From: Okamejei kenojei
Lineage: Eukaryota
Direction of reading: 5' to 3'
Assembly (NCBI GenBank): GCA_035221665.1
Contig: CM069160.1
Location: 7,006,001 to 7,070,000 of the forward strand
DNA length: 64,000 nt
Shown here: piece after piece, positions 30,097-62,140 of the stretch
Layout of the letters: every line of letters starts with the position of its first letter
How positions within the stretch are numbered: the stretch's first letter is position 1
Notes under the pieces: model-generated
What the model was told of the DNA's origin: nothing
The model's input: the letters and a program-made list of their open reading frames with translations, nothing else
The model's database searches: none
Program-made: the position numbers and the translations under genes

Positions 30097-32728
30097 TTAA
30101 AAGTGCTTTAATGAATTAGACAAGAACCCGCATGGACACCTAACCAGGTTTTTTAATTCTTCTCTGAATTTCGTCTGTGATACGGCGTAAATAAACGTGT
30201 TGGTGCAAGCACTCAGACACCTCAGCATATATCCGGACTGTTCTGCCACGGTAAATGGGTCGTCGTAATCTGTTGCTAAAAGCTTCACGTCTATAAATCG
30301 TACATTGATGAAACACACGAATATTACCATCCACAGTAGGATGAAGCTGCCGGATACTGCCAGCAATAGAATGATGGACTTCCTTCTATTCTCCACCTCT
30401 TGATCTGCGCCGCTCTCGTCCATCTTGTTCGCTCGGAGACCGCTCCTCACTATGTTGGCGCGTATAATGTGTCTGATTGTCAGGGCGTTGAGGAGCATGA
30501 TCAGTAGGAATGGTGTAAATGGGGTTAAAATAGTTTCGAACGACCAAAATGCTACCAGTAACGGTGAGGTGTAGAAGTCTGGGGTTACGCCACAGGACCA
30601 AGCCACGTTGTCAATGATTTCCCGTGGTGCGTAGACAAAATACATTGGGATATTTTCAATAACACTCAGGGAACACACCACTGCTATCACCAAAGTCGCG
30701 GTTTTACCTGTGCAATATCTTCCACGTAACATTTGACAACAAATCGCAACAAATCGATCGAAGGTGAATGTCACCGTTAGCCAGACAGAGCAATGAATGG
30801 ACATAAAAAGCAGGGTCAAGTTGACGCTACAAACTGGAGTTAAGTTCAGAAATGAATTGGGGAAATAGCCATCTTTAATCTCGTAGAGAATTACCTCGAA
30901 GATCAGAACCATTAAATCACCCACGGCCATGGATACCAGGTAAAGGGTGATACATTTGGAGAGACCACACTTTCCCCGGGGGAGAATTACGATTGCCACC
31001 ACGTTAACTGTAGAAAAAAACAAGTTAAAAAGACTTTACTACCCGTTATTGGTCTTGCAGGAAACTTAGTTTAGAGATACAGCTTGGAAACGGGACGTTC
31101 GGCCCATCGAGTCGTCTCCGACCAACGATCACAGTAGTTCTATCCGACACACTAGAGCCAATTTACAGAAGCCTATTAACCTACAGACCTGCACGTGTTT
31201 GGGTTCCGAGAGGAAACATTAACGATAACACACCATTGATCAAGCATGTGAACCAACACAATACCAGATCAAAGGGACGCTACAGATTTTTGGCTGTTGG
31301 TCTATTTCCAGTGAGTCAATGGGGACAGATTGGCGAAATTGGACATTCATGGGGTTCTTGAAAGCTGCGGTGGAACGTGGAAGGTTAAAGTCATTCTATT
31401 TTCTTACTGCCAAATATCTCCCGCCGAACCACTAAAAAAAGTATCCGGCTAACTACGACTAATTCACGGGGATTGTCGCTCGTCCACTGAATTGGTTCTG
31501 CAGCAGATGCCCTGACTTACTAAGTGTTCCGCCCGTTCACTTATTGGAAGAGCTATGTGAACAGACCTGGGACAGACACAAAATGCTGGAGCAACTCAGC
31601 GGGACAGGCAGCATCCCTGGATAGAATGAATCGGTGATGCCTCGGGTAAGGCCCTTCCTCGGATTGAGCAAGATGCAGAGCCTGAGGAATAGGCTCGATC
31701 CGAAGTGTCATCCATTCCTTCTATCCAGGGATGCTGCCTTTGCACCTGTTGATCCAGCATTTTGTCTCTTTCACTGGTGGAAGGCGGCATCTGCTGTTCC
31801 TTCCTGAAGAAACCCGGGACCCTAATTATTCTAGGAGACACTAGGATCGAAGTACGGGACTGCAAAGCGAAGTCCAACGTGCTGGATGGATTCAACAGGC
31901 AGGCATCTCATGCAGAGGGAAATTGAGATACGATGTTTCGGGTCTGGACATTTCTTCAGACTAATGATATTTTATCAGACTTTGTCCCTCTCATTCTAAA
32001 TCTGTGCCCTCTAATCGTTGTTTCCCACGATGAATGCAAGGCGGAATTTGGAACGAGCAATTGGAACATGTAATGAAGTTTCTATCTGATTTCCAACTTT
32101 GCCGCCTGTCGGTACCTCGCCTTGGAGACGCTGCGATACAGACACAGACTTCAGAGCGAGAAGCAATGAACACATTTGGGGATCCTGAAGTTGTAATGGG
32201 GGGTTTAAATTGTTAGTCGTACTGGTTTCTAGACTAAGGTAGAGCAGTTGGCAGAGATGCCGTCTCGCGGCTCCAGAAACCCGGGTTGAATCATGAACTC
32301 GGGTGCTCTCAGTGTGGAGGTTATTCCTTCTCCCTGTGACTATGGGTTTCCTTCCGGTTCTCCGGTTTCTTCCCACATTCCAAAGACCTGCGGGTTGGTA
32401 GGTAAATTGGCTTCTGTAAATTATCCCTGATATGTAGGACAGAGGTGACCGTTTGTCGGCGCGTACTCGGTGGGCCCGAGGGCCTATTTCCGCGCTGTAC
32501 CTCTAAAAGAAACACGATGTACGCTATATTTGCTGGTTCCATGTCGATTAGTATTTGGCTGCCAATACTAAATCAAACAGACAATTAAGAATACACTTCC
32601 ACTTAACAACACATAATTACACAACGAAAAGATTAACAGATGAGAATAAGCTGCTTACCAGGAACGCCGATGATGGCAAGGATCGGATAGCAAATGTTTT
32701 CTAGCTGAATTATTACCGGCTGTTTCAT
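30097..32728 (-). CDS. GPR139-like class A GPCR copy 1, intact, 326 aa; join(32728..32659, 31007..30097)
   Basis: Exon 1 MKQPVIIQLENICYPILAIIGVP with G|GTAAG; acceptor ttttctacAG; 981 nt total; seven TM segments with DRF and NTFIY. The phase-1 intron after G-x-P in TM1 matches GPR139. Confidence 0.93.
32237..32508 (+). mobile_element. V-SINE in the intron of GPCR copy 1
   Basis: Degenerate A/B boxes, cccacattccaaagac core, CR1-type tail. Confidence 0.8.
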
Positions 32729-33239
32729 ACTAGCCTTTCCAGTCAATGCTGTCACAGTTTATACTCGGGAGAAATGTAGTCACACATTAGCTCGGTAAAA
32801 TGATTGGTACTAGTGGCAGACTTTTAAACAGGCAAAATTGGCCAGATGCCAATGAGAACTGATTAAGTTAGTGCGCAATGTTTTCCGCCGAAATGAAGCA
32901 CGGGATAACACTTTAATTAGAAACACACATGTCTTAATATGCCAGAATTCTCCAGTTGGAAAAAATATTCCTTGATTTGCGGATCTATTTTTTCAGACAA
33001 ATGCGTGGACCATGCAGGACCCTATGGACATGTATATTGTCTTTTTTTAATCTTTTCTCTTTTAATTCAATATTAATTTCAAGTTTTCGTGTTCCTTGTT
33101 GGGTGTTATGATTATTGGCACACCAAGTTCCCTCCGGGGACGATTATAGTTCTAAAGTATCGCAATAGACTCACAGAATCAGGGATATTAGCAACCTTTC
33201 TCTCTCGTGCATCTAGATGCCTCTTTCTTGATCATACGA

Positions 33240-33560
33240 TCATACGATCAAACGTGATAGGAGCAGAATTAGGCCATTCGGCCCATAAAGTCTACTCCGC
33301 CATTCAATCATGGCTGATCTATTTCTCACTCATAACCTCATCTTCCTGCTTTTTCCCATAACATCTGACACCCGTACTAATCAAGAATATATCTGTCTCT
33401 GCCTTAAATATATCCAATAACGGCCTCCACAACCTTCTGTGGCACAGATTCACCACCATCTGACTAAAGAAATCCGTCCTAATCCCCTTACTAATAAAAC
33501 GTCGTTTAATTCGGACTCTCGTCTTCGTCGCTCCCACTAGTGGAAACATCCTCTGCACTT
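33240..33560 (-). mobile_element. CR1 3' fragment
   Basis: ggagcagaattaggccattcggccc tail; FPLVG.TKTR. Confidence 0.75.
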
Positions 33561-33649
33561 CCATTCACTCTTTGGAGTCAGTCACGCAGTTATAGAGTCA
33601 TGGAGAGAGAAACAGACCCTTTGGCCCACTTTCTCTCTGCAGGCAAATC

Positions 33650-33742
33650 AAGGGGGAGGGAGGGGAGGGAGGAAAGAGAGGGGAAGGAGGGGAGGGAAGA
33701 GAGAAATTGGGGAGGGAGAGAGAGGTGGATGGGAAAGGGAAA
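33650..33742 (+). repeat. GA-rich low-complexity tract
   Basis: Nearly pure purine run. Confidence 0.8.
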
Positions 33743-34009
33743 TGTGGATTATCTTCAGTGAGATTGCAAAATTAAGGTATGTTTTAGAGCTATTATATAT
33801 TCTCCTCCATATGAATAATATTAAACAATATCAAATAATATCAAACATTTGGAACTGCTTTCTTTTCCTTGATGACAATCTTAAAACATATGAATTCCAT
33901 AGTTTGTGACAGATATATACATTTTAATTGGATCATTCTGTACCGATGTAACATGCCCATTTCGTGATCGGGGGGGGGGGGGCAAATATGCATCAAGCCG
34001 ATAGCCTAA

Positions 34010-34280
34010 TCGTGAGCCGGGTTCGATCCCGAATACGAGTGCTGTTTTTATGCAGTTTCTACGTTCTCACCGTGACCTGCGTGTGTTTTCTCCGATTTCT
34101 TCGGGTTTCGTCTCACACTCCTACGACGTACAGGTCTGTAGGTCAATTGGCTTGGAAAATGTTTCTTTTTAAATTGTCCCTTGTCGGTGTAGGATAGTGT
34201 TCATCTGCGGGGATTGCTAGTCGGCAGGACACGGCGGGCCGAAGGGCATGTTTCCGCGCTCTTTCTCTAAAACGAAACTG
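34010..34280 (+). mobile_element. V-SINE
   Basis: GGTTCGATCC B box, V core and tail. Confidence 0.75.
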
Positions 34281-34559
34281 TACAAATTAAAAAAATATCA
34301 TATCTATTTCAATAACACACACCATTCGCTTCGTGTATTATTATGCAAAAATAAGATTATTACTCTGGGGCAATGCAAGAAAATATTTTAAGAGAAATGC
34401 CACATGCGTTTCTTGCAGACGATAATTGTTATTTCGTATATAAAGGTATTAAAAATCGAAATGATTGTTCTAAAATGAATATATTTCCAAGGGAGGACCA
34501 GTGTAAAAAAAGTGTTAGCATACGTTCTGAAATCTGTAAAATAATGTTTTAAGCAAGGA

Positions 34560-35280: not shown

Positions 35281-35389
35281 ACCGAAGCAACTAATATTGC
35301 ATCCTAATTTCAATAACAGTTGAAACAAGCGTAGATGTATAAATACATGTTTAAACTAGCTGTGCTTAACGGAAGTGAACATGCACATC

Positions 35390-37465: not shown

Positions 37466-37497
<32 letters not shown>

Positions 37498-37765
37498 ACG
37501 TCCGAAGACAGAACTGTTTGGCAGACTAACTCACCTCTTTGAGACGGCACTGATGTAGGTGGTCTTTTTGAGAATTAACGGGCATTTAAGAGCCACGGAA
37601 GGGGACACATTGCATTGACATGCTGAGGCGGAATGGACTGCCGGGATTAACCTGACAGTCGCAATAGATCCAATGTTCTGAATAGTATCTCGGAGCGTAA
37701 GAGGCAATAATATAACAAAGTGGACAACGACGAATGGAAAATATTTTTTCAGTTTCAAGGAGACA

Positions 37766-40577
37766 TTAAAAGCACTTTATTACATTGGAAATCAACACGA
37801 ATGGGCCTTTAATCACGTTTTTAAAATCCTCCCTGAATTTTTTCTGTGACACCCCATAAATAAACGTGTTGGTGCAAGCACTCAAACACCTCAGCATATA
37901 TCCGGACTGTTCGACAATTGTAAATGGGTCGTTGTAATTTGTTGTTAAAAGTTGAACGTCTATGAAGTATACACTCATGAAACACACAAAATCTACCAAC
38001 CACAGAAGAACGAAGCTACCAGATATGGCCAGCAATAGAATGACTGACTTCCTTCGGTTCTCTACTTCTTGATCTGCGCCGCTCTCGTCCTTCGTTTTCC
38101 CTCGAAGTCCGCTGCGCACTCTGTTGGCGTGTATAATATGTCTGATTGATCAGGACGTTGAGGAGCATGGTCAACAATATGGGTACAAATGGGGTTAAAA
38201 TTGTTTCGACCAACCAAAATACTGCCCATACCGGTAAGGTGTAGAAATCTGAAGTTACACCACAGAACCAGGCTACGTTGTCAATTATTTCTCGAGGTAC
38301 GAACATAAAATATATTGGGATATTTTGAATAATACTTAAGATACACGTCACTGCTATCACCAAAGCCGCAGTTTTCTCAGTGCAATATTTTTTACTCGTA
38401 ACTTCTGATGACAAATAGTGATATATCGATCGAGGGTGAAAGTCACTGTTAGACCAGACAGAGCAATCAATGGCAAATTAAATTAAATAGCAAATTCACC
38501 CTACAAATGGGCGTTAGATTCAGGAATGAATACACAAAATAGCTATCTTTAATCTCGTAGAAAATTACCTCGATGATCAGAACCATTAAATCAGCTACGG
38601 CCATGGATACCAGATAACGTGTGATACATTTAGAGAGACCACACTTCCCCCGGGAGAGTATAATGATTGCCAGCAGGTTAGCTGCAGAAAAGACAAAATT
38701 AAAATGACCAACTTTCGTTTTTCCATGAGTAAGTTAATTTGGCATTTCTTCGAACGAAACAGTGGATTATTTGACTGTACCCTGTCTGAATTCCTCGTGT
38801 AGCCCAATAAAATGTTTAGAGATGCAATTCGCCATCTCGCACGGAACAGAATCCTGCGCCAATGACACGGCTGGATTGAAAGACTCATTGCGTCTTGAGC
38901 ACAGATTGTTTAAAAAGGGTTTGACGGGCAGTTCAATTCAACTTAGACCAGTTACATTCCATTCACTTTACCGGAAAGGTATGTGGACCTTATATATTAG
39001 CGGCTGGTTTGCTTATCACAATCCAGTGGCAGACCTTTGGCAGGCAGAAGGAAGCATCGGCTTTAAAACAAAGAGCGTTTTAAATGTTCAAATTGTATTG
39101 GATAGAGATGTAATTCGAATCAGGATGTGCTACATAGATATCTGCGGTAAGCTACGTGACCAGCCTTAAACATATCAGTTGCAGTTTGTTTTGGCGAAGC
39201 GCATCTGAATACAACTGTTGCGTCCAATATTAACCTTAAATTCCTACTGTGCATGGTTCGTAATGCGATGGGGTTTTAACTCCCTTTTCACCAATGAAAA
39301 CGAACAAAGTGGCACGTGCTTAATAGCTCTGGCGACCCAGGTTCAATACGGGCCACTGGCATGCTATGGTCTGCCTGGAGTTCCCCCAATGACCGCCTGG
39401 GCTAACCCTGGGCGATTCATTAATACAGCAAACAAACTGGAGTTTCTGCCCACACCGTCGTCGCGCAGCATCCTTTCGCACTTGTTCTATGTTACAGCAC
39501 ACTCGACTCAACTCCCTAGACACAAGAGACAATTTACAGAGCGGAGGTAACTTACAAACCCACAGGAGAGCTCCCGGTGTAACCCACGCTTCCGCTGAAA
39601 GAGGTGTACACCTCAAACAGACCGCTGTTGAGGGTCAGGGTCAAACCCGGGTATTTGCTGCTGTGAGATATTAGGTCCACCAGCTGCACTACTGTGCGGC
39701 GAGGTGCTCCGGATTTCCCTTTACGTGCGAAATTTTTTGAGTTTGGTAAATTATTTACCCCCCGCTAGTGGTCCCTGATGTAACATTTTCTGGCAAAGGT
39801 TGCGGGGAATTTGCAAATTCCGTGTCAAAATTAAAGCGGGTAAATCAAATTACGTTTTGGAGTGACATAGACTACATGGACGGAATAGCCACCATCTACA
39901 TAATAGGAGCAACGTTAGCCTTAGTGGCTGTCAGTTCCTTTCAATTAGCTGATGTAGAATAAATATAATCCTGGTTTTTGCCATTTCCAGTCAAAAGGCA
40001 GAAAGCATAATGTCAAAAGTCCACCAAACCACCATTGACTAATCCGCTGTACCGTCTTCTGACGTTCTGGGCTTCCGAGGGGTTCGTTTTCGCCAAACAA
40101 GCCAAAGACATGTGGGAGTGTAGTTTAATTGGGCTCTGTAGAATTGCCCCAAGAGTTGGAGGGATTCAATGAGAACGTGGGATAACATAGAACTCGTGTG
40201 AACGGGAGGGCAGTGTGGACTCCGTCGATGAAGAGGTACAGCACAGCAACATGCATTTCGGCTTACAATATATATACTGAACGTCAAGACAATTTAAACT
40301 AATTCCACATTTAGGAGTCGTCCACACCCTCCTTCCCCCGTCTTTCTAAATGCCATTGACTATATCGACAATAGATTGGAATGTGTAAATTGATTTTCGA
40401 TGTCACTAATTGGCATCAGAACATCAAGCAACAAGTAATCGCACACATGTGTTTTAACAGTAAAGGCTAGGCGGCGTAAATATCGGCAGAAATACCAGCA
40501 AGCTCACCAGGAACACCAATGATCGCAAGAATTGGATAGTAAATATTTTCGACCTGGATGAGTACCGGCAATTCCAT
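37766..40577 (-). pseudogene. GPR139-like copy 2, frameshifted as assembled; join(40577..40508, 38681..37766)
   Basis: Exon 1 MELPVLIQVENIYYPILAIIGVP; splice sites intact. Exon 2 is 916 nt versus 911, with insertions at ~38475 (+1), ~38453 (+1), ~38390 (+2) and ~38150 (+1). Confidence 0.85.
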
Positions 40578-40619
40578 GGTCGGAGTGCAGCGAGCTCTCC
40601 TGCCACTGGCATGAAATGC

Positions 40620-40745
40620 CGTTTGCTTTTAAAGGTAGCTACGGATCTCCAGAGAACACATATGACGACAAATCAAGGGGAAATAAATGTGGATTAGTGC
40701 CAGTCAGTTGAACAAACAAAGTTTGTCAGATCATGGGCTACTGCA
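40620..40745 (-). promoter_or_regulatory. Conserved promoter block, GPCR copy 2
   Basis: TTTAAA (40628), TCTCCAGAGA (40646), CATATG (40659), GGATTAG (40691), AACAAACAAA; aligns with copies 3 and 4. Confidence 0.65.
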
Positions 40746-41489
40746 AATTAGGGAACAGGCAATAACTACCACCAAAGTCGATTGTATAAAATATATGTTG
40801 CAATATTTAATTGTACAAAACCGAGAGAAATATGACAGAAAATATGTTGCATCCACGTTTCCTGATGAAATGCCATGTTATGTTTTCCTTGCACATAAAT
40901 GTGCCTATCTAAAAGTCACTTAAACGACACACTCAAATCTACTTTCACCACGATGCGCCGAACGCACCCTGTGTAAAATATGTGGACCGCCTATCACCTT
41001 TAAATATTGACCTTCTCACGTTAAATATATGCCGCCTAGACGTGGGAAAAAAAAACTTACTGTCTTTCCCATCTACCCATATCATAATATTACAGATTTC
41101 TCCTGGTTTTCGTTCAACCTTCGGCGTTCTAGAGAAAGCAATCAAAGCTTTTGTGTCGAGCTAAAACGCCCCATTCCATGTAATATTCTGCAAAGCATCC
41201 CAGTCTTACTTGCTCTACTGGGATAATCAGAACTGCACACAATACTCCAAACACGTCCAACATAAATTGTTATATGGATGTATCATGACTTAGTGCCCAA
41301 TACCCTCAAAACATGTTCAATGAAAGCAACATCACTTATGCCTTATGTACCACTCTATCGACTTGTGTCGCCACTTACAGCAAGCTCTAGATGTTGAGCC
41401 CAATACCTATTGTCTATGGTCTCTAATATCCTTAACTGCGCATCAGCGCTGTTAAGGGTATTATAGACAATACACCATATACAATGTAT

Positions 41490-42260
41490 TGTCGGAGTAG
41501 GAGTAGGTCATTCGGCCATTCAAATCAGCACCACCATTCAATATGATCATGGCTGATCATCCACAATCAGTACCCTGATCCTGCAATCTCGCCATATCCC
41601 CCGACTCCGCCATCTATAAGAGCTGTATCTAACTCTCTTGAAAGCTTCCATAGAATTGGCCTCCACTGCCTTCTGATTCTCAACCCTTTGCGCGAAAAAG
41701 TTTTTCCTCATCTCCGTTCAAAAGGGCTTACCCCTAATTCTTAAACTTTGCCCCCTGGTTCTGGACTCCCTCAACATCGGGAACACGTTTCCTGCATCTA
41801 GCGTGTCCAAACCCTTAATAATCCTATATGTTTCAATAAGATCACCTCTCATCCTTAATGCCAGAGTATGCAACCACAGCCGCTCCATTCTATCAACATA
41901 TGACAGTCCCGTCATCCCGGGAATTAACCTCGTGAACCTATGTTGTACTCCCGCAAGAGCAGGAATGTCCTTCCTCAAATTTGGAGACCAAAACTGCACA
42001 CAATAGCCCAGGTGTGGTCTCCCCAGGGCCCTGTGCAATTGCAGAAGGACCTCTTTGCTTCTATAGTCAACTCCTCTTGTTATGAAGGCCAACATGTCAT
42101 TAGCTTTCTTGCCTGCTGTATCTGCATGCTTACTTTCAGTGACTGATGAACAAGGACCCCCGATATATCGTTGTACTTACCGTTTTTCTTGACACCATTC
42201 AGATAATAACCTGCCTTTCTACTTTCGCCATGAAAGTGGTGAACCTCACACCAAAATGGA
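41490..42260 (-). mobile_element. CR1 3' fragment inserted in an older CR1
   Basis: MLAFITRG...[13 protein letters not shown]...RGDLIETY. Confidence 0.85.
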
Positions 42261-44375: not shown

Positions 44376-44564
44376 TCTGTTATCGTTGAACGAAGTTGGC
44401 TGTGGGTGCCTTTATATATTTGCAAAACCATATGTGGAAGTTATAACGTCAATGATAAACGTATTTTTCCTAGGGTATGAAAGCCATAAAACAAGAGAGT
44501 ATATATAAAAAGTGTATGGGGTAGAGATTTAATGAGGACATGACCGCCGATTTTTATTTTTTTG

Positions 44565-45969: not shown

Positions 45970-46280
45970 NNNNNNNNNNNNNNNNNNNNNNNNNNNNNNN
46001 NNNNNNNNNNNNNNNNNNNNNNNNNNNNNNNNNNNNNNNNNNNNNNNNNNNNNNNNNNNNNNNNNNNNNNNNNNNNNNNNNNNNNNNNNNNNNNNNNNNN
46101 NNNNNNNNNNNNNNNNNNNNNNNNNNNNNNNNNNNNNNNNNNNNNNNNNNNNNNNNNNNNNNNNNNNNNNNNNNNNNNNNNNNNNNNNNNNNNNNNNNNN
46201 NNNNNNNNNNNNNNNNNNNNNNNNNNNNNNNNNNNNNNNNNNNNNNNNNNNNNNNNNNNNNNNNNNNNNNNNNNNNNNNN
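45970..46280. other. Assembly gap (311 N) flanked by CT-rich sequence
   Basis: Run of N. Confidence 1.
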
Positions 46281-47440
46281 CCTCTCTCTCTCCCTCCCAA
46301 CTATATTTAGCCGGGAAATATCTCAACAATTATGACTGGGACAGGGACAGTATATGTGTTATGCAATCTGTGTGTAAAGTGAGATCATGAGTTCAAATAC
46401 GCACATAGAAATCTAGAAAATGTGGGATCTCACTAAAGTTGCAAAACAGAAACTTAAACGCGGAAGCTTAATAGCCTGTCATAGTAACACTAGATCTATG
46501 TTATCCCACCGCCCACCACGGTGACGTAGCGGTAAAGCTACTGCCTTACAGGGCCAGCGAACCGGGTTCTATCCTTACCACATGTGCTTATCTTTACGGA
46601 GTTTGTACGCTCTCCCGTAACCTTATTGATTTAATGCTTTGCATTTGCGCAATGTGGGATATGACCAGTAAGTCTGTAGATGTCAAAAAATGATGGCATT
46701 GTTCACAGTGTGGAAGATAATTATTGGCTGGAATACGATATTTGATTAAAATGGCTGAGCAATGGTAGATGCAATTCAATCTAGCTAATTGTGAAGTTAT
46801 GTACTTTGGAAAGTTTAATAACCATAGGGCGTAATCAGTTCGTTTTTGTCCTGCGCATAATTATGGTAGTTCCATTACAGGGATCAGGGGCAGGGAATGA
46901 GGAAGCTGCTGGAGATTTTTGCCAGAATGCTGCCCGGATTAGTGGTTTTCAACTCTGAGGAGATGATTTATGATTTTTCTCTTTAGCCTGCATCTTGCAT
47001 CTCATTTTCACCTGGGACCCACTTGTCCTATTAATGACAGCACAGAACGGCAGACATACGAAGACATCTCAACGAGCTGTGGCGAGTTTTTCAAACGTCA
47101 GTTTATTCAAGATCTTAATAGTTTCTACTGCGAAAAACTCTGAATGAACCCAGAGTTCAATCACTCACAGCGCCGACAGGTTTTTTTACAACTGATGATA
47201 CATTGATTACATGTGGATCTTATTTGTTTTCATAATGCTTTAATGAACAACGTATCCTTGTTGTCTTCCTTCCTTGGACCCCCTCCCCACCCTCACCCAC
47301 CAATTATTTTTAACCTTCGGAGTTTTCCAGACCAATTCTGCATCCAACTTTCGACGTCTTAATCCCGTGGCATTCACCTTTGTGAACTGTAACTGTGGGA
47401 GCTGGCCAAAGGCATTCAATAAGTGTATGCCAATCACAAA

Positions 47441-49007
47441 AGAGTACTTAAGGAAGTAGCTCAGGAAATAGTGGATGCATTAGTGATAATCTTTCAAAAC
47501 TCTTTAGATTCTAGAGTAGTTCCTGAGGATTGGCGGGTAGCAAATGTAACCCCTCTTTTTAAGAAGGGAGGGAGAGAGAAAACGGGGAATTACAGACCAG
47601 TTAGTCTAACATCGGTAGTGGGGAAACTGCTAGAGTCAGTTATTAAAGATGGGATAGCAGCACATTTGGAAAGTGGTGAAATCATTGGACAAAGTCAGCA
47701 TGGATTTAGAAAAGGTAAATCATGTCTGACGAATCTTGTGGAATTTTTCGAGGATGTAACTAGTAGCGTGGATAAGGGAGAACCAGTGGATGTGGTATAT
47801 CTGGACTTCCAGAAGGCTTTCGACAAGGTCGCACATAAGAGATTAGTATACAAACTTAAAGCATACGGTATTAGGGGTTCAGTATTGATGTGGATAGAGA
47901 ACTGGCTGGCAAACAGGAAGCAAAGAGTAGGAGTAAACGGGTCCTTTTCACAATGGCAGGCAGTAACTAGTGGGGTACCGCAGGGCTCAGTGCTGGGACC
48001 CCAGCTGTTTACAATATATATTAATGATCTGGATGAGGGAATTGAAGGCAATATCTCCAAGTTTGCGGATGACACTAAGCTGGGGGGCAGTGTTCGCTGT
48101 GAGGAGGATGCTAGGAGACTGCAAGGTGACTTGGATAGGCTGGGTGAGTGGGCAAATGTTTGGCAGATGCAGTATAATGTGGATAAATGTGAGGTTATCC
48201 ACTTTGGTGGCAAAAACAGGAAAGCAGACTATTATTTAAATGGTGGCCGATTAGGAAAAGGGGAGATGCAGCGAGACCTGGGTGTCATGGTACACCAGTC
48301 ATTGAAAGTAGGCATGCAGATGCAGCAGGCAGTGAAAAAAGCGAATGGTATGTTAGCTTTCATAGCAAAAGGATTTGAGTACAGGAGCAGGGAGGTTCTA
48401 CTTCAGTTGTACAGGGTCTTGGTGAGACCACACCTGGAGTATTGCGTACAGTTTTGGTCTCCAAATCTGAGGAAGGACATTATTGCCATAGAGGGAGTGC
48501 AGAAAAGGTTCACCAGACTGATTCCTGGGATGTCAGGACTGTCTTATGAAGAAAGACTGGATAGACTCGGTTTATACTCTCTGGAATTTAGGAGATTGAG
48601 AGGGGATCTTATAGAAACTTACAAAATTCTTAAGGGGTTGGACAGGCTAGATGCAGGAAGATTGTTCCCGATGTTGGGGAAGTCCAGGACAAGGGGTCAC
48701 AGCTTAAAGATAAGGGGGAAATCCTTTAAGACCGAGATGAGAAAGACTTTTTTCACACAGAGAGTGGTGAGTCTCTGGAACTCTCTGCCACAGAGGGTAG
48801 TTGAGGCCAGTTAATTGGCTATATTTAAGAGTGAGTTGGATGTGGCCCTTGTGGCTAAGGGGATCAGAGGGTATGGAGAGAAGGCAGGTACGGGATACTG
48901 AGTTGGATGATCAGCCATGATCATATTGAATGGCGGTGCAGGCTCGAAGGGCTGAATGGCCTACTCCTGCACCTAATTTCTATGTTTCTATGTTTCTATG
49001 TTTCTAT
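47441..49007 (+). mobile_element. Young 5'-truncated CR1 family A with an uninterrupted RT frame
   Basis: ORF 47423-48814 contains [34 protein letters not shown]; one late premature TAA; (TTTCTATG)n tail. No endonuclease or ORF1. Confidence 0.95.
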
Positions 49008-52432: not shown

Positions 52433-55001
52433 TCACAACAAACACTTTATTGAATTGCAAATTAAAATGAATGGGCTCTTAATCACATGTATCAATTCCT
52501 CCCTGAATTTTTTCTGTGACACCCCATAAATAAACGTATTGATGCAAGCACTCAGAGACCTCAGCATGTATCCGGACAGTTCCGCTATTGTAAATGGGTC
52601 GTTGTTATCTCTTGTTGAAAACTCTACGTCGAGGAAATGTACACTCAAGACGCACACGAAGTTTACAATCCACAGTAGGACAAAGCTACCGGATATGGCC
52701 AGCAATAGAATGATGGACTTCCTTCTGCTCTCCACCTCTTGATCCGTGCCGCCATCGTCCTTCGTTTTCTCTCGGAGACCTCTCCTCACTCTGTTGGCGT
52801 GTATGATGTGCCTGATTGTCAGGGCATTGAGGAGCATGATCAGCAAAATTGGTAAACATGGGGTAAAAATGATTTTGATGGACAAAAGTGCTGCCCACAA
52901 CTGTGAGGTGTAGAAGTATGGATTCATGACACATGACCAGCCCACGTTGTTAATTATTTCTCGAGGCCCGAAGGCAAAATATATAGGTATATTTGCGATA
53001 ATAGAGAAGATACAGGTCAGCGCTATCACCAAAGCCGCAGTTCTCTCCGTGCAATATTTTGTTCTTAAATTCTGAGTACATATAGTGACAAATCGATCGA
53101 ATGTGAAGGTCACCGTTAGCCAGACAGAGCAATCGAAACAAATAAAATTCAAGACAATATTCAGTTTACAAACATGAGTTATGTTGAGGAATGAATAAGG
53201 AAAATAGCCATCTGAAATCTCGGAGAGAATTACCTCGAAGATCAGAACCATTAAATCAGCTACGGCCATGGATACCAGATAGCGGGAGATACATTTGGAG
53301 AGTCCACACTTTCCCCGGGAGAGAATTACGATTGCCATCAGATTAGCTGTAGGAAAGACGAAATTAAAATCACCAACATTCACTATCCCAGAAGAACTTC
53401 AGTTTGACAGTTCTGTGAAGGTAAATGGAGTATATCAGACTGTCACCTACCCCTTTACTCTGATTCTGCAAAGGACATCTGAAAGATGGATTTCGCAAAC
53501 TAATAGTGAATAAAATGCAATGGCCAAGGCCATGACTGGAATCGCGGCCTATCGCAGAACGATTATTAGGACGTCTGACGTGTATGGTGGATAAATATCA
53601 ATCGTGAATTTCATTCGCCTGACCACAAAGGAATGTGTAGGGGAACGAATATTGGCCGATTTGCTCATCACAGTCCAGCGCCAAACCTTATGGCATAACC
53701 ATCCATCTGCAGGCAGAATGCAGCATCAATATAAACACAAGAACATTTTGATGATTACCGCAGTTGACAGGTATTGCGTCTAAACATAAATCGCATCGAG
53801 AAGTTCTGTACACATGTCCGCGGTGAGGCGTGGCCAGACTCGCATTTCTCACCAGCTGATTGATTTCGGGATGCACATATGAATGCGATTACTGCATCCA
53901 ATTCCCGCCTCAGTTAAACTATATTTCCTAACGCGCTTGCGTTATAAAGCATTCTATTTTTAGCGCCCATTTCCCTCGGCAAATTTACAGCAGGCGCACT
54001 GCTGCATGACAGCTAAACGACCTAGGATCGATACTGTTCACTAGTGCTGGTTGCACTTTCTCCCTGCGCTGGTGTAGGTTCTCCCTGGGTCATTGATTGA
54101 TGGATTGATTAATGCAGCATGGTAACAAGTCTCCGGCACACCGAGTTGTACCGATCATCTATCACCCGTTCACACTGGTTCTCGGTTATCCAACATTCGC
54201 ATCCACTCCCCGCACACTGGAAGCAAATTATAGAATCCAGTTCACCTACAAACCAGGACGGGCTGTGAGAGAAATCTAGAGCGTCCGGACCTTTGGGGTG
54301 CAGAAGACGCCAGATCTGACAGTTAAATCAACGCAATCAGCCGAGATCAGTGCAAATTCCACACAGGGTCCCAGGTCAGGATCAAACTGACTCTCTTGCG
54401 CTGTAAGGCAGCAGCTCTGAAAGCTCCGCTTATGTGCGGCACGGTTCTCCGTTGTCCCACTTGCGATACACCGCTGGCTGGCAGGTTACCTATCCACATA
54501 ATTTCTCGCCAGTGCATAGGGTCATGGCAAAACTTGGAGTAAATTGAGAAGAGCATGTCAACTGAAAATCAGCCGGTTTATCTGATTGCAGTTGGTCGTG
54601 ACACAGACCAGATTGACGAACTTGCCGCCCTCCCTATCATAGGGGCAGGATTCATTGCATTCGCTATCTGTCCATTTCGATTTGGGGATGAAGTATAATT
54701 AAAGTCCTGTTTTTTTTCACAGTGGTCTAATGGTGTCAGAAACATTCGCACCAGCTACAGATTGGTATCGAACATGTGGGGGTATCTTAATTCAGTGTGC
54801 GACGGGCGGAACCGATGAATATGAGCCGCACAATGCTGGATCAGTAACTCAAGCCATAATTAATAACACAGATTGTTTCAACAGTAAAGGCGAGAGAGCG
54901 AAACCTGGGCACCGAATAACAAAGGGCTTACCAGGAATACCAATGATGACAAGGATAGGGTAGAAAATGTTCTCTACCTGGTTGAGTACCGGCAGTTCCA
55001 T
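52433..55001 (-). CDS. GPR139-like copy 3, intact, 327 aa; join(55001..54932, 53346..52433)
   Basis: Exon 1 MELPVLNQVENIFYPILVIIGIP with G|GTAAG; acceptor ttcctacAG; 984 nt open frame. Confidence 0.93.
54110..54445 (-). mobile_element. V-SINE fragment in the intron of GPCR copy 3
   Basis: Reverse-strand head (gcgctgtaaggcagcagctc) and tail. Confidence 0.6.
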
Positions 55002-55044
55002 GCCCAGATTTTATCGACGTTTTCTGCCAGTGGTCTGACAGGTC

Positions 55045-55165
55045 GCTTGCATTTAAAGTTAGCTGCATATTCTCCAGATAAATCATATGACTTCTAATCA
55101 AGGCAAATTAATTGGGATTAGTGTCAGTCAGTTAAACAAACAAAGTTAACCTCATCACGTTAGCT
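55045..55165 (-). promoter_or_regulatory. Conserved promoter block, GPCR copy 3
   Basis: TTTAAA (55052), TCTCCAGATA (55071), CATATG (55084), TTAATTGGGATTAG (55108). Confidence 0.65.
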
Positions 55166-56539
55166 GCTGCTAAGTATGTTATTGCGCAATAACTGCCAGC
55201 ATTGTTCTATTAGATAGATATTATATTACTCTATTACACAAAATAGGGAGAATTATAAGTAAGAACATATATTTATTAATCTATTCACATTCTCTGCTTC
55301 CAGCGGCAAAGTAATGTTGAATTATCCACGCATATCCATTTTCCTATCTAAAAGCTTCGCGCACAACGCTCTCACATCTGCTTTCACCGCCATTCCTGGC
55401 AGCCCGTTCCAGCCACTCGCCACGACCTGCTAAAGCTCCTGGCCGCGTATCTGCTTTAAATGTTGACCCTCTCAATTTAAACATATGCTCTCTAGTCCAT
55501 CCCAGCAAGGATATGTTTCTGAGTGTTTACCTCATGTACGCTTCCCACAATTGTGTTTATTTATATTATGTCTCTCTGCATCCTTCAGCATTCCAGAGAA
55601 AGCGATCAAATATTGTCCAACTTCTCCTTGTAACAAATACAGTCCATTCGAGGCAGAATTCCAGTAAAACGCCTCTGCATCCACTCCAAAGCCTCCACGT
55701 CATTGCTGCAAGGGGCCCCCCAGAACTGCACACAACGCTCCAAATGAGGTCTAACCAACCTGGTGGAGAACAGCATCGTGACTTCGTGACCTTTGTAATC
55801 AAAGCCCGCCCAACGTAGGCAAGCATCCCATACGCCTCCTGAACCATGCTTTCTGCTTATGATGCTACTTTCAGGGAGCTGCGCATCTGGACCCGAATAT
55901 CATTCTTCATATCAGTGTTGTTAAGAGTCCTGCCGTCAACCGTATAGTTCGCTTTACACTGACCTCGCAAAAGGCAACACATCCTGACTACCGAAATTTA
56001 AACTCATCTGCCACTTCCCCGCATATGTCTGCAGTTGACCGACATCCCACTGTGTACTGTTACAATATTCCCCCCATCTCGCAACTTCAGCAATATCTGC
56101 TTTGTCTGCAGACATAAGAAAAACGTATCTACGTCGATATCTCTCTCAATGTCTGCAGATTAAAAAATATAGGTATTGGCCAGTACGACCATGCCCCACC
56201 AATTATGCTAAGGTTCGAATGTTTGAGAACTTCAATTTGCTTAGCGTTAAATACAGTATGATCTGTGTGGTCCAAACACAATGATGGCACAGCTAAGTAG
56301 ACACACTGAAGCCTACGTCCTTCAGAGACTGAAAACAATCGGTATATCTCTGGTAACTCTTCCAAGCCTCTGCAGATGCACCAAAATAAGCAATCTGCTC
56401 CTCCGTCTCCTTCAAAAACCTTGGAAAGAACCCATTAGGTCCAGCCACCCACGTCAACCTGACATGCGCTTCTTTTTTCCTTGTCAGGTTTACAATCTCC
56501 TTGGTCATCCACGATTGCCTTTCGACCCACGCGATTACT

Positions 56540-58110: not shown

Positions 58111-58659
58111 GTGCAACACCTCCCAGTTACTGGGATTGAAATCCATCTGCCATTTCCCGCATATTTCTGCAGCTGACCAACATCCCACTGTCGTTTTCAC
58201 AGCCTTCCACCCTTCTCGAAACGTCAGCAATGATTGCTTTGCCTGCAGACTTAAAACCAACCTGTCGATATCTACCTCAATAACAGCAGATGAAACAGAT
58301 AGATATTGACATCAGTATGAACATGTCCCACCAGCTTCAATGATACGGAGAAGTGGAATGTTTGAGAGCTTCAATCTGCTTGGCGTTAATATTCTGATCG
58401 TTCTGCGTGGACGACACACGATGAATACACAACTAAGAAGACACAATGAAGTCTCTACGTCCTTCGGAGGCCGAGAAAATTCGGTATGTACCTAGTGACA
58501 CTTCCAAGCTTCTGCAGACGCACCAAAACAAGCAATCTGCACTCTGGTCTCCTTCAATAACCTTGTATAGACCCGATGTCTATCTCTATGCCAGCTGGAT
58601 GAAAGAGATAGATATTGACTTCAGTAGGAACATGCCCAATCAGTTTCAATGATGCATAA

Positions 58660-59290
58660 TAATTCCCCTCTTCTATTATAGATGAGGCTCTCACTGGGAT
58701 CTCCCCGATATCCCGCAGCTCCGCTCTTACTACCCCTCTCCCCACTCGTAACAATGACAGAGCACCCTTGTCGTCACTTTCCACCCCATCAGCCGTCGCA
58801 TACAGCATATAATTCTCCAACATTTTCGACATTTCCAAAGGGATCCCACTACTGGCCACGTCTTCCCATTTCCACCGCTTTCAGCGTTTTGCAGAGTTCC
58901 CCCCGTAACTCGTTGGTCAACTCACCCCCTTCTCACCCAAACCACCCCTCCCCTGATCATTCCCCTGCAACCGCAGGAGATGCAACATCTGTCCCTTAAC
59001 CTTCCCCCTCGACTCCATCCAAGGACCCAAACAATCTTTCCAGGTGTGCAGATGTTCATCTGCACGTCCTCCAACCTTTCGGTTCTCTGAACTCTTCCAC
59101 TCAGTCCGTCTTACCCAAGCTGATCTCCCGATGACCCAGCACATAAACACCCCCTTCCATTCTCCATCTGACATTTCTGCTCTGGGACTGCTCCATTGTC
59201 AGAGTGAGGCCCAGCCAAATTGGAGGATAGCGCCTCATATTTCGCTTGGGTAGTTTACACCCAACTGTATGAACATTGACTTCTCAAACT
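58660..59290 (+). mobile_element. Penelope-like fragment (linker and GIY-YIG C-terminus)
   Basis: Homologous to 34560-35280. Confidence 0.7.
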
Positions 59291-59299
59291 TTGTCCTCG

Positions 59300-60200
59300 T
59301 GAATTTGGATGGCAATGTGGACGTTAGTGTATAAGGACATTAAGTGTACTAATACAGCATTGATGCAGGAGGCAGCCCCGATGCAGTCGTTGATGTGGCG
59401 GTGAAAGACGGAGGAGAGGGCGATTGTTCAACGTACCCGACCAAAATGCATGCATATCCAGCGTTCATTCGGGACCGCGTGGCTTTACTTTTAACTTGGT
59501 GAAAGGGAGAGCAGTCTAAAAATATGTTTTTTTTCCGGGAAAAGAGATATTGCGCCGGCGGAGAAGAGTGTTCGTAAAGGGGCATTGAATGTGTCTCCAT
59601 TCGAGGAAGAAGCGGAGTGCCTTGAAACTCAGAGCAGGAGAGAGATGTGATGGAATTCGACGACCATGGTGAGAATGATGCAATGGAGCCTCGATAGCTA
59701 ATGTTATTAAATAGATGAAGGGCGAGTGAGTTGTGGTTGACGGAGGTGTGTGGTGGCTCAAGACGAGGGATGAAATGGAATCGACGTACGTAGAGATGGG
59801 TTCCACGGGGCAGCAGAAAGCAGTGACAATGGGTCTGCCAATGCTGTCTGCTTAGTGGATTTTGGGGAAGAGGTAGAAGCGGACAGCGTGGGGCCGCGGA
59901 ATGATTAGGATGGTGGTTGTGGAGCGGAGATCGCCGGAGGCGCTGCGCTCAGAAACTGCCTGGGAGGTGATGGACTATTGTGCGTGTGTGTTAGTATGAG
60001 GAGATGTGCTAGAACTTATCTCTTACCTGAACTGGGTACAGATTAGCCCGCCAGATTAAAATGGCATCTCCATTGTTGATGGATTTACTAACAATGTCTG
60101 GATTTTTGCTGAGAGAAGGGTGGGCACTGCGTTCAGAAAGGGGTGAGATCGGTAGGTGTAGTAGAGAATTGAAGACAGTTGATGTCGCACCCGCAGTTGG
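59300..60200 (-). mobile_element. Penelope-like RT fragment
   Basis: PISTYVDSISSLV, KALRFFLE, YACILVGYVEQS; homologous to 50160-50390. Confidence 0.7.
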
Positions 60201-60259
60201 AAATAAAAAGGTCCAGAAAGGGCACACGGGGCTTTACCGTATCGACCCAAAACGTAACA

Positions 60260-60645
60260 AAGACACATAATGCTGAGTAACTCCGGGAATCAGGCATCAT
60301 TCCTGGAGATCATGGTCTGGTGCTGTTTCGGGTTGGAAACCTTATTTAGTCTGAAGAACGGTTCCGATCCAAAAATCGCCGATCCATGTTCTCCAAAGAC
60401 GATTTACTCCGCGTTTCGTCTCTGTCTTCGGCATAAACCAACACAGGAAGATCCTTGCTATTGCCTCACCCATCCCTGTTCCCCGGGGATGTTGCCTGAC
60501 CTGTTGGTTTACTCCACCACATGTCCTTTTTCTGAAATCAATATCTGCTAGTCGGAAGATGGGTCTCGACCCGAAACGTCACCCATTCCTTCTCGTCAGA
60601 GATGCTGCATGTCCCGCTGAGTTACTCCAGCATTTTGTGTCTATC
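60260..60645. repeat. Cluster of Penelope-type terminal repeats
   Basis: An inverted pair plus tandem copies; near-consensus copy at ~60550-60645. Confidence 0.7.
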
Positions 60646-61030
60646 TATTGAAGATAATGTATCTGCAGATTCCTTCTTCTGACTGTTCTCTGATGAATGT
60701 GGATTTCGCATTTATTTTTCTGCCACCGCGTGGATTTGTCTCATTGGCACGACGTCCCGTCCACGTCTCAAAGACGCAAATTGGTTGACCGAGTTAATGA
60801 CTTCCATGATTTGGTCATAAAACAATTGGTCTGCTGGGGCGTTAGTGGGCATTTAAGTGTCACGTAAGGGGATACATTGAATAGGCGTGCGGAGGGCAAA
60901 GGGGCTACAATGAGTACCATGGCAGTCGGTATTGACTGGATGGTGCGAATGGTATCTCGGAACATTAGATGCATCATATAACCTAGAACACGAAGTAATT
61001 TCGAAAATAATTTTCAGTTTCACCGCGACA

Positions 61031-62140
61031 TTAAAAACACTTTATTAAATCGAAAAAGAAAACGAATGGGCTCTTAATCCCATTTTTAAATTCATCCCTG
61101 ATTGTTTTCTGGGACACCCCATAAATAAACGTGTTGGTGCAGGAACTCAGAGCCATCGGCATATATCCGGACTGTTCTGCAATGGTAAATGGATCGTTGT
61201 AATCTGATTCTAAAAGGTGAACGTCCAGGAAATATGCACTCAGGAAACACACGAAGGTCACCATCCAAACTAGTACGAAGCTACCGGATATGGCCAGCAA
61301 TAGAACGATGAAATTCCTTCTGTTCTCCACCTCGATATCTGCGCCGGTCTGGGTATTTTTGCTCCCTCGGAGACTGCTCCTCACTCTATTGGCGTGTACA
61401 ATGTGTCCTTATTGTCATGGCGTTGAGGAGCATGATTATTAAAATTGGTGCAAATGGTGTTAGAATTGTTTCCATCACCCAAAGTGCTGCCCATAATAGT
61501 GAGGTGTAGATTTCCGATGTTGTCCAACAGTACCAAGCCACATTGTCAATCAGTTGTAGAGGTACGAGGGAAATATATACCGGAATATTTTGAATAATAC
61601 ACAAGATACAAGTCAGTGCTACCACCAAAGCCGCAGTTTTCTCAGTGCAATATTCTGCTCGTAAATTCAGATTGCAAATAGTGATAAATCGATCGAAGGA
61701 GAAAGTCACGTTAGCCAGACGGAGCAATCAATAAAAATACAATTCAAGAAAATATGCAGCTTACAAATGTGAGAACGGTTGAGGAATGAAAACGGAAAAT
61801 GGGCTCCTGTAATCTCTGAGAGAATTACCTCGAATATCAGAAACATTAGATCAGCTCCGGCCATGGATACCAGATATAGGGTGATACATTTAGAGAAACC
61901 ACATTTTCTCCGGGAGAGGATAACGATTGCAAACAGGTTAGCTGTAGAAAAGACGAAATTTAAATTTAAATAGCTATAATTATTGTTCTTGGAGAGTAAT
62001 ACTTTGACTACTTCGTATGAAAGTGAATAGTTTTATTGATTCGGTAAGCTGCTCCTTTTCCTGGGCTTACCGGGAACACCAATGATGGCAAGAATAGGGT
62101 AGAAAATGTTCTCAACCTGGTTGAGTACCGGTAGTGCCAT
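61031..62140 (-). pseudogene. GPR139-like copy 4, frameshifted; join(62140..62071, 61941..61031)
   Basis: Exon 1 MALPVLNQVENIFYPILAIIGVP; 129-bp intron; a -1 shift at ~61710 gives an immediate TGA; +1 at ~61406. Confidence 0.85.

What the first reader, a model, noticed from the sequence alone, without database searches (positions are those of the whole stretch)
30097..62140. Tandem GPR139-like receptor array evolving like a chemosensory repertoire
Seen in sequence: four co-oriented paralogs with identical exon structure (70-nt exon 1, phase-1 intron in TM1), a very short N-terminus, DRF/DRY and NTFIY in place of NPxxY; two intact and two disrupted. Established: GPR139 and GPR142 are single-copy aromatic amino-acid (Trp/Phe)-responsive receptors in mammals, and cartilaginous fishes have very few classical ORs. 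Inference: these are not GPR139 orthologs but a lineage-expanded birth-and-death family that may serve as an unrecognised amino-acid or peptide chemoreceptor repertoire. This is my best candidate for an undescribed system here.
Basis: partly seen in the sequence, partly recalled or inferred. Interest (0 to 1): 0.82.

Follow-up and report, generated by a model that had tools for sequence, protein, structure and literature searches.

The report
Skate orphan GPR139-related receptor gene array
Four tandem copies (two intact, two broken) of an orphan receptor gene belong to a large family that has multiplied in sharks, skates and rays; it is only distantly related to GPR139, and whether it serves smell or taste is untested.

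Summary
Four minus-strand paralogs share a 70-nt first coding exon, a phase-1 intron in TM1 and a ~0.91-kb second exon. c1 and c3 are intact (about 326 and 327 codons by arithmetic). c2 has four frameshifting insertions. c4 has two frameshifts, seven changes at family-invariant sites and an intron of only 129 nt. The assembly gap (45970-46280) lies in CT-rich intergenic DNA and touches no copy.

They are rhodopsin-class GPCRs. Human GPR139 is the nearest solved receptor, but only distantly (62 bits). Coelacanth, salamander and teleost proteins are much closer (181-209 bits), so the genes are not GPR139 orthologs.

The family is large in elasmobranchs: 2171 word-search hits, of which the 120 best listed are all elasmobranch apart from six unnamed Logan contigs, and 135 clusters at 50% identity with E<=1e-30. 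It shows species-specific clades, paralog dN/dS of 0.33-0.52 and more variation in the extracellular than the intracellular helix halves. That supports birth-and-death evolution.

The chemosensory reading is untested. No RNA run holds the genes, and no paper found describes the family. GPR139's polar ligand-contact residues are not conserved, so an amino-acid ligand cannot be inferred.

This scan has already noted the same family on other DNA of this genome (19 notes, one followed up).

The parts
30097..31007 (-). c1 exon 2 (intact, stop codon at 30097-30099); TM1 end to C-terminus
   Evidence: ORF; Pfam 7tm_1 E 1.3e-20; acceptor mapped. 88% identical to Rhinoraja longicauda P0001/P0002. Only one deviation (D95H, position 3.37) at 59 family positions that are >=95% conserved.
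31008..32658 (-). c1 intron (1651 nt, phase 1) carrying high-copy repeat pieces
   Evidence: GTAAGC donor and CTACAG acceptor. Contigs of runs X1-X3 pile only on 31034-31315, 31504-31785 and 32350-32537.
32659..32728 (-). c1 coding exon 1 (70 nt, MKQPVIIQLENICYPILAIIGVP + 1 nt)
37766..38681 (-). c2 exon 2, pseudogene: four frameshifting insertions (38474 +1, 38453 +1, 38393 +2, 38149 +1); no in-frame stop once they are skipped
   Evidence: Two deviations at conserved family positions, so either recently inactivated or, less likely, an assembly indel error.
40508..40577 (-). c2 coding exon 1 (70 nt, intact, GTGAGC donor)
45970..46280 (.). assembly gap (311 N) in CT-rich intergenic DNA between c2 and c3; not part of any paralog
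52433..53346 (-). c3 exon 2 (intact, stop at 52433-52435)
   Evidence: ORF; Pfam 7tm_1 E 1.8e-24. No deviation at the 59 conserved family positions. Long terminal branch of 0.22.
54932..55001 (-). c3 coding exon 1 (70 nt, MELPVLNQVENIFYPILVIIGIP + 1 nt)
55002..55171 (-). conserved 5' flank of c3 (putative promoter or 5'UTR); matching blocks lie upstream of c1, c2 and c4
   Evidence: 67-79% identity among c2-c4 over 170 nt, with a shorter core shared with c1.
61031..61941 (-). c4 exon 2, older pseudogene: 1-nt deletion at 61710 and 1-nt insertion at 61408, which leave about 100 codons (TM3-TM5) out of frame
   Evidence: Seven deviations at conserved family positions, more than any of 120 annotated relatives (maximum 5).
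61942..62070 (-). c4 intron, only 129 nt (1.6-1.8 kb in c1-c3)
62071..62140 (-). c4 coding exon 1 (70 nt, open)

Best explanation
The region is a tandem array of four two-exon genes. They belong to a large orphan class-A (rhodopsin-type) GPCR family that is related to, but distinct from, GPR139/GPR142. The family has expanded by repeated tandem duplication and gene loss in elasmobranchs.

Shown here:
- c1 and c3 look like working genes: open frames and 0-1 changes at family-invariant positions.
- c2 is a recently disabled pseudogene and c4 an older one.
- All four fall in a skate/ray-specific clade, and c1 has a near 1:1 counterpart in Rhinoraja.

Inferred mechanism:
- The N-terminus is only a few residues long, so any ligand must bind in the transmembrane pocket or at ECL2. 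That points to a small molecule or a short peptide.
- The pocket keeps a constant core: aromatic 3.33, W6.48, and acidic D3.37, E/D5.42, E near 7.35 and E/D2.57. This suggests a shared cationic group on the ligands.
- Positions 3.32, 6.51, 7.43, 5.39 and 3.29 are hypervariable, which would tune specificity between paralogs.
- The strongly conserved intracellular half (DRF, ICL1 SRGKCGLSKC, helix 8) suggests one common transducer.

The ligand, the tissue and whether the receptors sense external or internal cues are unknown.
For: Four copies and their structure.

GPCR identity: Pfam 7tm_1.

Relation to GPR139:
- The family profile ranks human GPR139 first in the PDB (E 4.4e-16, 62 bits; next PrRP-R and TRH-R at 45 bits).
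- Shared signatures are TM1 G.PAN, TM3 SI..S.W.TV..T.DR..A.C, N5.58 and no proline at 7.50.
- The coelacanth relative scores 70 bits against GPR139.

Family size and spread:
- 2171 hits; the best 120 are elasmobranch apart from six unnamed Logan contigs, and many sit on one chromosome per species.
- 135 clusters at 50% identity with E<=1e-30.
- Every named cluster among the 30 looked up that scored above the bony-vertebrate relatives is elasmobranch; below them come salamander, coelacanth and teleost, then amphioxus.

Evolutionary pattern:
- Elasmobranch clade 99% SH-aLRT; species-specific subclades such as 11 Pristiophorus and 6 Heptranchias genes; the window copies sit in a 16-member batoid clade.
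- dN/dS 0.33-0.52 with dS 0.41-0.49.
- Entropy 1.59 bits in extracellular helix halves against 0.84 bits in intracellular halves, p 1.6e-10, with the conserved and hypervariable pocket positions listed.
- Deviations at conserved sites: c1 1, c2 2, c3 0, c4 7.
Against: - No expression evidence of any kind for these copies.
- The four c2 frameshifts could not be checked against reads.
- The pocket assignment rests on sequence alignment to GPR139 and generic numbering, not on a structure. TM7 numbering is uncertain by one residue.
- Greater variability in extracellular than intracellular halves is common to many GPCR families and does not by itself show ligand diversification.
- The tree and entropy analyses use only the 120 best hits to c3, which is a biased sample.
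- The family lacks P6.50, P7.50 and W4.50, so normal activation is assumed, not shown.
Confidence: 0.8

Rival explanations
1. One reading: the family is an unrecognised exteroceptive chemoreceptor repertoire (olfactory, gustatory or solitary chemosensory cells). It would stand in for the tiny OR repertoire of cartilaginous fishes, possibly detecting amino acids or peptides.
For: Its evolution resembles a chemoreceptor family:
- large size, tandem arrays, lineage-specific clades and pseudogenes;
- dN/dS 0.33-0.52;
- a variable pocket on a constant intracellular face;
- no ectodomain.

In this genome the arrays lie among TCR V segments, as OR genes do beside mammalian TRAV (AI notes, not tested here).
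Against: - No tissue data at all.
- GPR139's amino-acid-binding polar residues R6.51 and N7.38 are not conserved.
- Paralogs are much more alike (the best 120 hits are 47-72% identical to c3) than OR repertoires typically are.
- Non-chemosensory families such as MRGPR evolve the same way.
Confidence: 0.3
2. The family consists of internal receptors, on neurons, endocrine cells, somatosensory neurons or immune cells. Their ligands would be endogenous or microbe-derived amines or peptides. The expansion would resemble that of rodent MRGPRs, FPRs or chemokine receptors, not that of exteroceptive chemoreceptors.
For: - The nearest known receptors are brain receptors (GPR139) and peptide receptors (PrRP-R, TRH-R, V2R, NTSR1).
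- Single or few-copy relatives persist in coelacanth, salamanders and teleosts, which suggests an ancestral internal role.
- The conserved acidic pocket fits basic peptides or amines.
- The arrays sit in immune-gene neighbourhoods (AI notes).
Against: No expression or ligand data. So large and fast-turning a family is unusual for receptors of endogenous ligands unless the ligands also diversify, and no expanded ligand family is known.
Confidence: 0.35
3. The genes are true GPR139 (or GPR142) orthologs or co-orthologs that keep the aromatic amino-acid (L-Trp/L-Phe) sensing function, as the automatic name 'probable GPR139' implies.
For: GPR139 is the best solved match, and several unusual motifs are shared: N5.58, no P7.50, the TM3 signature, F3.33 and W6.48.
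Against: - Only 62-70 bits to human GPR139, although GPR139 is described as highly conserved across vertebrates (PMC12208981).
- Bony-vertebrate proteins that are clearly not GPR139 are three times closer.
- H5.43 is replaced by E/D, R6.51 by T/I/N and N7.38 by Y.
- Extra GPR139/142-related orphan clades ('GPR210A/B') are already reported in coelacanth, gar and fishes (PMC6504862).
Confidence: 0.03
4. The whole array is decaying. c1 and c3 would be open only by chance and have no function.
For: - Two of the four copies are broken.
- The surroundings are rich in transposons.
- c1 carries D3.37H at a 95%-conserved site, and c3 has a long branch and K at position 5.42.
- A follow-up on another window called such arrays 'old gene arrays decaying side by side'.
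Against: - c1 and c3 keep 58/59 and 59/59 of the conserved positions, against 52/59 for c4.
- Splice sites and start codons are intact.
- dN/dS is well below 1.
- c1 is 88% identical to an annotated Rhinoraja gene.
Confidence: 0.1

Closest known systems
Human GPR139 (PDB 7VUG/9M42), with its paralog GPR142
   Same: - Class-A GPCR and the best solved match to the family profile (E 4.4e-16).
- Shared TM1 G.PAN and TM3 SI..S.W.TV..T.DR..A.C.
- N at 5.58 and no proline at 7.50 (NFFLY against NTFIY).
- F3.33 and W6.48 of the ligand pocket are kept.
   Different: - Only 62-70 bits of similarity.
- The family has no P6.50 (LLWMV against WAP) and a far shorter N-terminus.
- H5.43 is replaced by E/D, R6.51 by variable T/I/N and N7.38 by Y.
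- The family has many members and is fast-evolving, whereas GPR139 is single-copy and described as highly conserved.
- Whether GPR139 has its intron at the same place was not tested.
Bony-vertebrate 'probable GPR139' relatives: Latimeria XP_005988539.1, Pleurodeles XP_069092602.1, Odontesthes KAM4562537.1. These may be the 'GPR210A/B' orphans of PMC6504862.
   Same: They are the closest non-elasmobranch proteins (181-209 bits to the family profile) and form the sister lineages of the elasmobranch clade in the tree. They are orphans too.
   Different: They appear as one or a few clusters per species in the searches, against tens of clusters in elasmobranchs. Equating them with GPR210 is my inference and was not tested.
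Vertebrate chemoreceptor and sensory multigene families that evolve by birth and death (OR, TAAR, V1R/ORA, T2R; also MRGPR)
   Same: Tandem arrays, lineage-specific clades, frequent pseudogenes, a variable binding pocket on a conserved intracellular face, no large ectodomain, and (per scan notes) a location among TCR V segments like mammalian ORs near TRAV.
   Different: Not homologous to any of them beyond class A. Two coding exons with an intron in TM1, whereas those families mostly have single-exon coding regions. No evidence of sensory-neuron expression. Lower sequence diversity than ORs.

Membership tests
Class A (rhodopsin-type) GPCR | 7TM domain matching Pfam PF00001 | tested here: met
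   c1 E 1.3e-20, c3 E 1.8e-24; profile positions 2-260 of 260 matched.
Class A (rhodopsin-type) GPCR | Conserved microswitches: N1.50, D2.50, D/ERY, C3.25-ECL2 disulfide, CWxP, NPxxY | tested here: inconclusive
   Present and invariant or nearly so: N1.50, D2.50, DRF, C83/C162, W6.48 and Y7.53. Absent: P6.50 (LLWMV), P7.50 (NTFIY) and W4.50. GPR139, a working receptor, also lacks P7.50.
GPR139/GPR142 subfamily (related) | GPR139 is the nearest characterised receptor and the subfamily-specific motifs are shared | tested here: met
   Profile against PDB: GPR139 62 bits, next best 45 bits. Shared TM1 and TM3 motifs, N5.58 and no P7.50. The same ranking holds for coelacanth and amphioxus relatives.
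GPR139 orthologs | Orthology: similarity in line with GPR139's high conservation across vertebrates, and no closer non-GPR139 lineage | tested here: not met
   62-70 bits to human GPR139. Coelacanth, salamander and teleost proteins are far closer to the family (181-209 bits). True elasmobranch GPR139 could not be fetched for a joint tree.
GPR139 orthologs | Conserved ligand site for L-Trp/L-Phe (F3.33, H5.43, W6.48, R6.51, N7.38; PMC5430874) | tested here: not met
   F/Y3.33 and W6.48 are kept. H5.43 is replaced by E/D (110 of 122 sequences), R6.51 by T/I/N/Y/S/F, and N7.38 by Y.
GPR139/GPR142 subfamily (related) | Shared intron position (phase 1, in TM1 before N1.50) | not tested
Chemosensory receptor repertoire | Large multigene family in tandem arrays with lineage-specific gain and loss and pseudogenes | tested here: met
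   19 scan notes in this genome.
Chemosensory receptor repertoire | Diversifying ligand pocket on a conserved signalling face | tested here: inconclusive
   Extracellular helix halves 1.59 bits against 0.84 bits for intracellular halves (p 1.6e-10). Positions 3.32, 6.51 and 7.43 are hypervariable, but many pocket residues are strongly conserved, and no site-wise selection test was possible without orthologous DNA.
Chemosensory receptor repertoire | Expression in sensory neurons of a chemosensory epithelium, one or few receptors per cell | not testable with these tools
   No RNA run holding the stretch was listed. The three runs of the species laid contigs only on intronic repeats. Supplements of the catshark sensory transcriptome paper are not held.
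Chemosensory receptor repertoire | Activation by environmental chemical cues | not testable with these tools
   Needs heterologous assays.

The most novel reading that the evidence does not exclude
The elasmobranch-expanded GPR139-related family is a fifth, so far unrecognised vertebrate chemosensory GPCR family. It would be expressed in sparse sensory cells of the nose, mouth or skin of sharks and rays and tuned to cationic small molecules or short peptides. That would help explain how animals with only a handful of ORs, and about 30 V2Rs in the catshark, smell so well. Its position beside MHC and TCR genes would parallel mammalian OR clusters.
Probability: 0.3. Interest if true: 0.85.

Novelty: new member of a known kind. 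Interest (0 to 1): 0.55.

Why it matters
[quoted passage not shown] Yet the papers read stress their small olfactory receptor repertoire (PMC10116579, PMC11979771) and a general paucity of GPCRs (PMC8455134).

Here is a class-A GPCR family with probably tens to more than a hundred genes per elasmobranch genome. It evolves by birth and death. In the annotations it carries the automatic label 'probable GPR139', and no paper I could find mentions it.

Even if it is not chemosensory, it is one of the larger lineage-specific receptor expansions in vertebrates, and its ligand and tissue are unknown. The question is directly testable with existing skate and catshark tissue RNA-seq and in situ probes.

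For this window alone the result is ordinary: four more members, two of them dead, of a family this scan has already met many times in the same genome.

Tried and rejected
- Expression. The look-up of sequencing runs listed no RNA holder of c3. Laying the three runs of the species on c1 gave contigs only on intronic high-copy repeats and zero on both exons. This is uninformative and is not evidence of silence.
So I made no dN/dS against the Rhinoraja ortholog, no neighbour check in other species, and no check of the intron position in relatives.
- Logan hits as possible transcripts. Their N-termini read through the intron (for example ...FTFA|ANLL), so they are unspliced genomic contigs.
- Literature. 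Searches for GPR139 with shark or elasmobranch terms, 'GPR139-like', 'coupled receptor 139', and orphan GPCR expansion in cartilaginous fish found nothing on this family. Supplements of the catshark sensory paper are not held.
- Amino-acid ligand by analogy with GPR139. Rejected, because the polar contact residues are not conserved.
- Homeodomain (TAATCC/CAATTA) sites in the conserved 5' block as a hint of sensory-neuron promoters. They are present in c2-c4 but not in intact c1, so this stays only a passing note.
A quick look at stop-free minus-strand segments of >=70 aa showed nothing recognisable. I did not pursue it.
- The joined exon 1 + exon 2 protein was not sent to any search tool. Exon 2 was searched by reference. 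Exon 1 (23 codons) was only aligned, being too short for most of the protein search tools. Full lengths are arithmetic.
- Structure prediction and fold search were not run. The fold is not in doubt, and the tool returns no coordinates for pocket mapping.

Full report
**Observation**

tblastn of the two long minus-strand ORFs (30097-31023 and 52433-53383) against the window finds four and only four copies, all on the minus strand.

Aligning the upstream regions shows one short block conserved in all four. It is a 70-nt coding exon: ATG, 23 codons, one extra G, then a GTAAGC or GTGAGC donor.

| copy | exon 1 | first base of exon 2 | intron length |
|---|---|---|---|
| c1 | 32659-32728 | 31007 | 1651 nt |
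| c2 | 40508-40577 | 38681 | 1826 nt |
| c3 | 54932-55001 | 53346 | 1585 nt |
| c4 | 62071-62140 | 61941 | 129 nt |

Exon 2 follows a pyrimidine-rich CTACAG or CTGCAG acceptor. The intron is phase 1 and splits the Ala codon of G-V-P-A-N, one residue before N1.50.

By arithmetic the spliced products are 326 codons (c1) and 327 codons (c3), matching the 323-327 aa usual for annotated relatives. I did not send the joined protein to any search tool. Exon 2 was searched by reference.

State of each copy:
- c1 and c3 are open.
- c2 has four frameshifting insertions (38474, 38453, 38393, 38149). Read through with the inserted bases skipped, it has no stop and only two changes at the 59 family positions that are at least 95% conserved.
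- c4 has a 1-nt deletion (61710) and a 1-nt insertion (61408). These put about 100 codons out of frame.
- c4 also has seven changes at conserved positions, more than any of 120 annotated relatives, and its intron is far shorter than the others.
- The motif is DRF in c1, c3 and c4 and DRY in c2. NTFIY replaces NPxxY in all four.

**The gap**

The N run at 45970-46280 lies between c2 exon 1 (40577) and the c3 stop (52433). It has CT-rich low-complexity DNA on both sides and LINE fragments nearby. No paralog spans it, so continuity or frame across it is irrelevant to the four genes. A further copy hidden in the gap cannot be excluded.

**What the genes are**

Both intact products match Pfam 7tm_1 over the whole model.

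A word-index search with c3 exon 2 gave 2171 proteins. The 120 best come from Heptranchias, Heterodontus, Pristiophorus, Rhinoraja, Leucoraja, Stegostoma, Rhincodon, Scyliorhinus, Chiloscyllium, Mustelus, Hemitrygon, Narcine and Mobula, plus six unnamed Logan contigs. Many sit on one chromosome per species.

Nearly all of the named ones are auto-named 'probable G-protein coupled receptor 139'. A scatter of other names (FMRFamide, sex-peptide, PrRP, V2, capa receptor-like) shows how weak the similarity to any named receptor is.

c1 is 88% identical to two Rhinoraja longicauda models, so the window comes from a skate.

A profile of 35 family members ranks human GPR139 first among solved structures (E 4.4e-16, 62 bits). 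Next come PrRP-R and TRH-R at about 45 bits. The family shares several signatures with GPR139:
- TM1 G.PAN;
- TM3 SI..S.W.TV..T.DR..A.C;
- N at 5.58;
- no proline at 7.50.

So 'GPR139-like' is a fair description of kinship.

**Not orthologs of GPR139**

An exhaustive profile search of 1.84 billion representatives found 135 clusters with E<=1e-30. I looked up 30 representatives.
- Every named one that scored above the bony-vertebrate relatives is elasmobranch. One further such entry is a UniRef record whose organism was not shown; another is an unnamed JGI contig.
- Next come salamanders (209 bits), coelacanth (193 bits) and two teleosts (181 and 138 bits).
- Then comes amphioxus (about 124-135 bits).

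The coelacanth protein itself scores only 70 bits against human GPR139. GPR139 is described as highly conserved across vertebrates (PMC12208981). These proteins therefore form a separate, old subfamily.

They may be the extra GPR139/142-related orphans 'GPR210A/B' reported from coelacanth, gar and fishes (PMC6504862). That equation is my inference.

I could not fetch a true elasmobranch GPR139 for a joint tree.

**Evolutionary mode**

In a maximum-likelihood tree of the 120 hits, the four window copies and six outgroups, the elasmobranch sequences form one clade (99% SH-aLRT). Inside it are many species-specific subclades, for example 11 Pristiophorus genes and 6 Heptranchias genes, and several skate clades. 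The window copies fall in a 16-member batoid clade.

Pairwise dN/dS among the window copies is 0.33-0.52 at dS 0.41-0.49.

Column entropy is 1.59 bits in the extracellular halves of the helices and 0.84 bits in the intracellular halves (p 1.6e-10). Positions 3.32, 6.51, 7.43, 5.39 and 3.29 are hypervariable. D3.37, E/D5.42, E near 7.35, W6.48 and Y near 7.39 are strongly conserved.

Together with two pseudogenes out of four, this is birth-and-death evolution with a constant signalling face. It is compatible with ligand diversification but does not prove it.

**The ligand question**

Mutagenesis defines GPR139's site as F3.33, H5.43, W6.48, N7.38 and R6.51. The last two bind the charged part of L-Trp and L-Phe (PMC5430874).

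In the family, F/Y3.33 and W6.48 persist. H5.43 aligns with E/D, R6.51 with a hypervariable T/I/N, and N7.38 with Y.

The amino-acid ligand therefore cannot be carried over from GPR139. The conserved acidic pocket hints at cationic ligands (inference).

**The chemosensory claim**

Nothing here tests it.
- No RNA run holding c3 was listed.
- Contigs from three small runs of the species cover only intronic repeats of c1.
- The shark olfaction papers read analyse only OR, TAAR, ORA and V2R.
- One of them reports no GPCR among the top 50 genes of the catshark 'brain & olfactory epithelium' library.
- No paper found mentions this family.

An equally good rival is an MRGPR-like expansion of internal, somatosensory or immune receptors.

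**Context in the scan**

Nineteen notes in this genome mention GPR139-like arrays, mostly among TCR V segments. One follow-up (s1-880460) reached the same view of the family and compared it with OR genes among mammalian TRAV segments. So this scan has already found the family on other DNA of this genome.

**Verdict**

'Not orthologs, lineage-expanded birth-and-death family' is supported. 'Chemoreceptor repertoire for amino acids or peptides' remains an attractive but untested hypothesis, to which I give about 0.3.

The loci are new members of a known kind: class-A orphan GPCRs related to GPR139, already modelled in NCBI annotations of other species.

The family as a whole appears undescribed in the literature searched and deserves an expression survey.

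Noticed in passing
window 31034-31315, 31504-31785, 32350-32537: Three pieces of very high-copy interspersed repeat inside the c1 intron. Contigs from all three runs of the species pile up there (summed depth 1e4-4e5), while the flanking exons have none.
   Followed up: partly
window 32729-32900, 40578-40750, 55002-55171, 62141-62310: A conserved block of about 170 nt lies directly 5' of each start codon (67-79% identity among c2-c4, with a shorter core shared with c1). c2 carries a TAATCC homeodomain-like site, c3 and c4 carry TAATCC plus CAATTA, and intact c1 lacks them. It is a candidate shared promoter.
   Followed up: partly
window 61942-62070: The c4 intron is only 129 nt against 1.6-1.8 kb in c1-c3. 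This is most simply an internal deletion in an already dead copy.
   Followed up: partly
window 47423-48814 (+), 13113-15356 (-), 22227-24250 (-), 41718-42095 (-): LINE reverse-transcriptase and endonuclease ORFs and fragments fill much of the space between and beside the receptor genes. Tc1/mariner-like transposase ORFs lie at 2564-3458 (+).
   Followed up: no
window 62813-63324: A GC-rich minisatellite (periods 11, 36, 47 and 68 nt) starts about 670 nt upstream of c4 exon 1. It is the region another note calls an SVA-like composite retroposon.
   Followed up: no
family-wide (alignment A3; P0004 numbering): The family lacks P6.50 (LLWMV), P7.50 (NTFIY), W4.50 and Y5.58 (N). It has a nearly invariant ICL1 motif SRGKCGLSKC with two cysteines. 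This is an unusual set of microswitch changes for a presumably active class-A receptor.
   Followed up: partly
Stop-free minus-strand segments of >=70 aa showed nothing recognisable by eye. No family scan was run.
   Followed up: no
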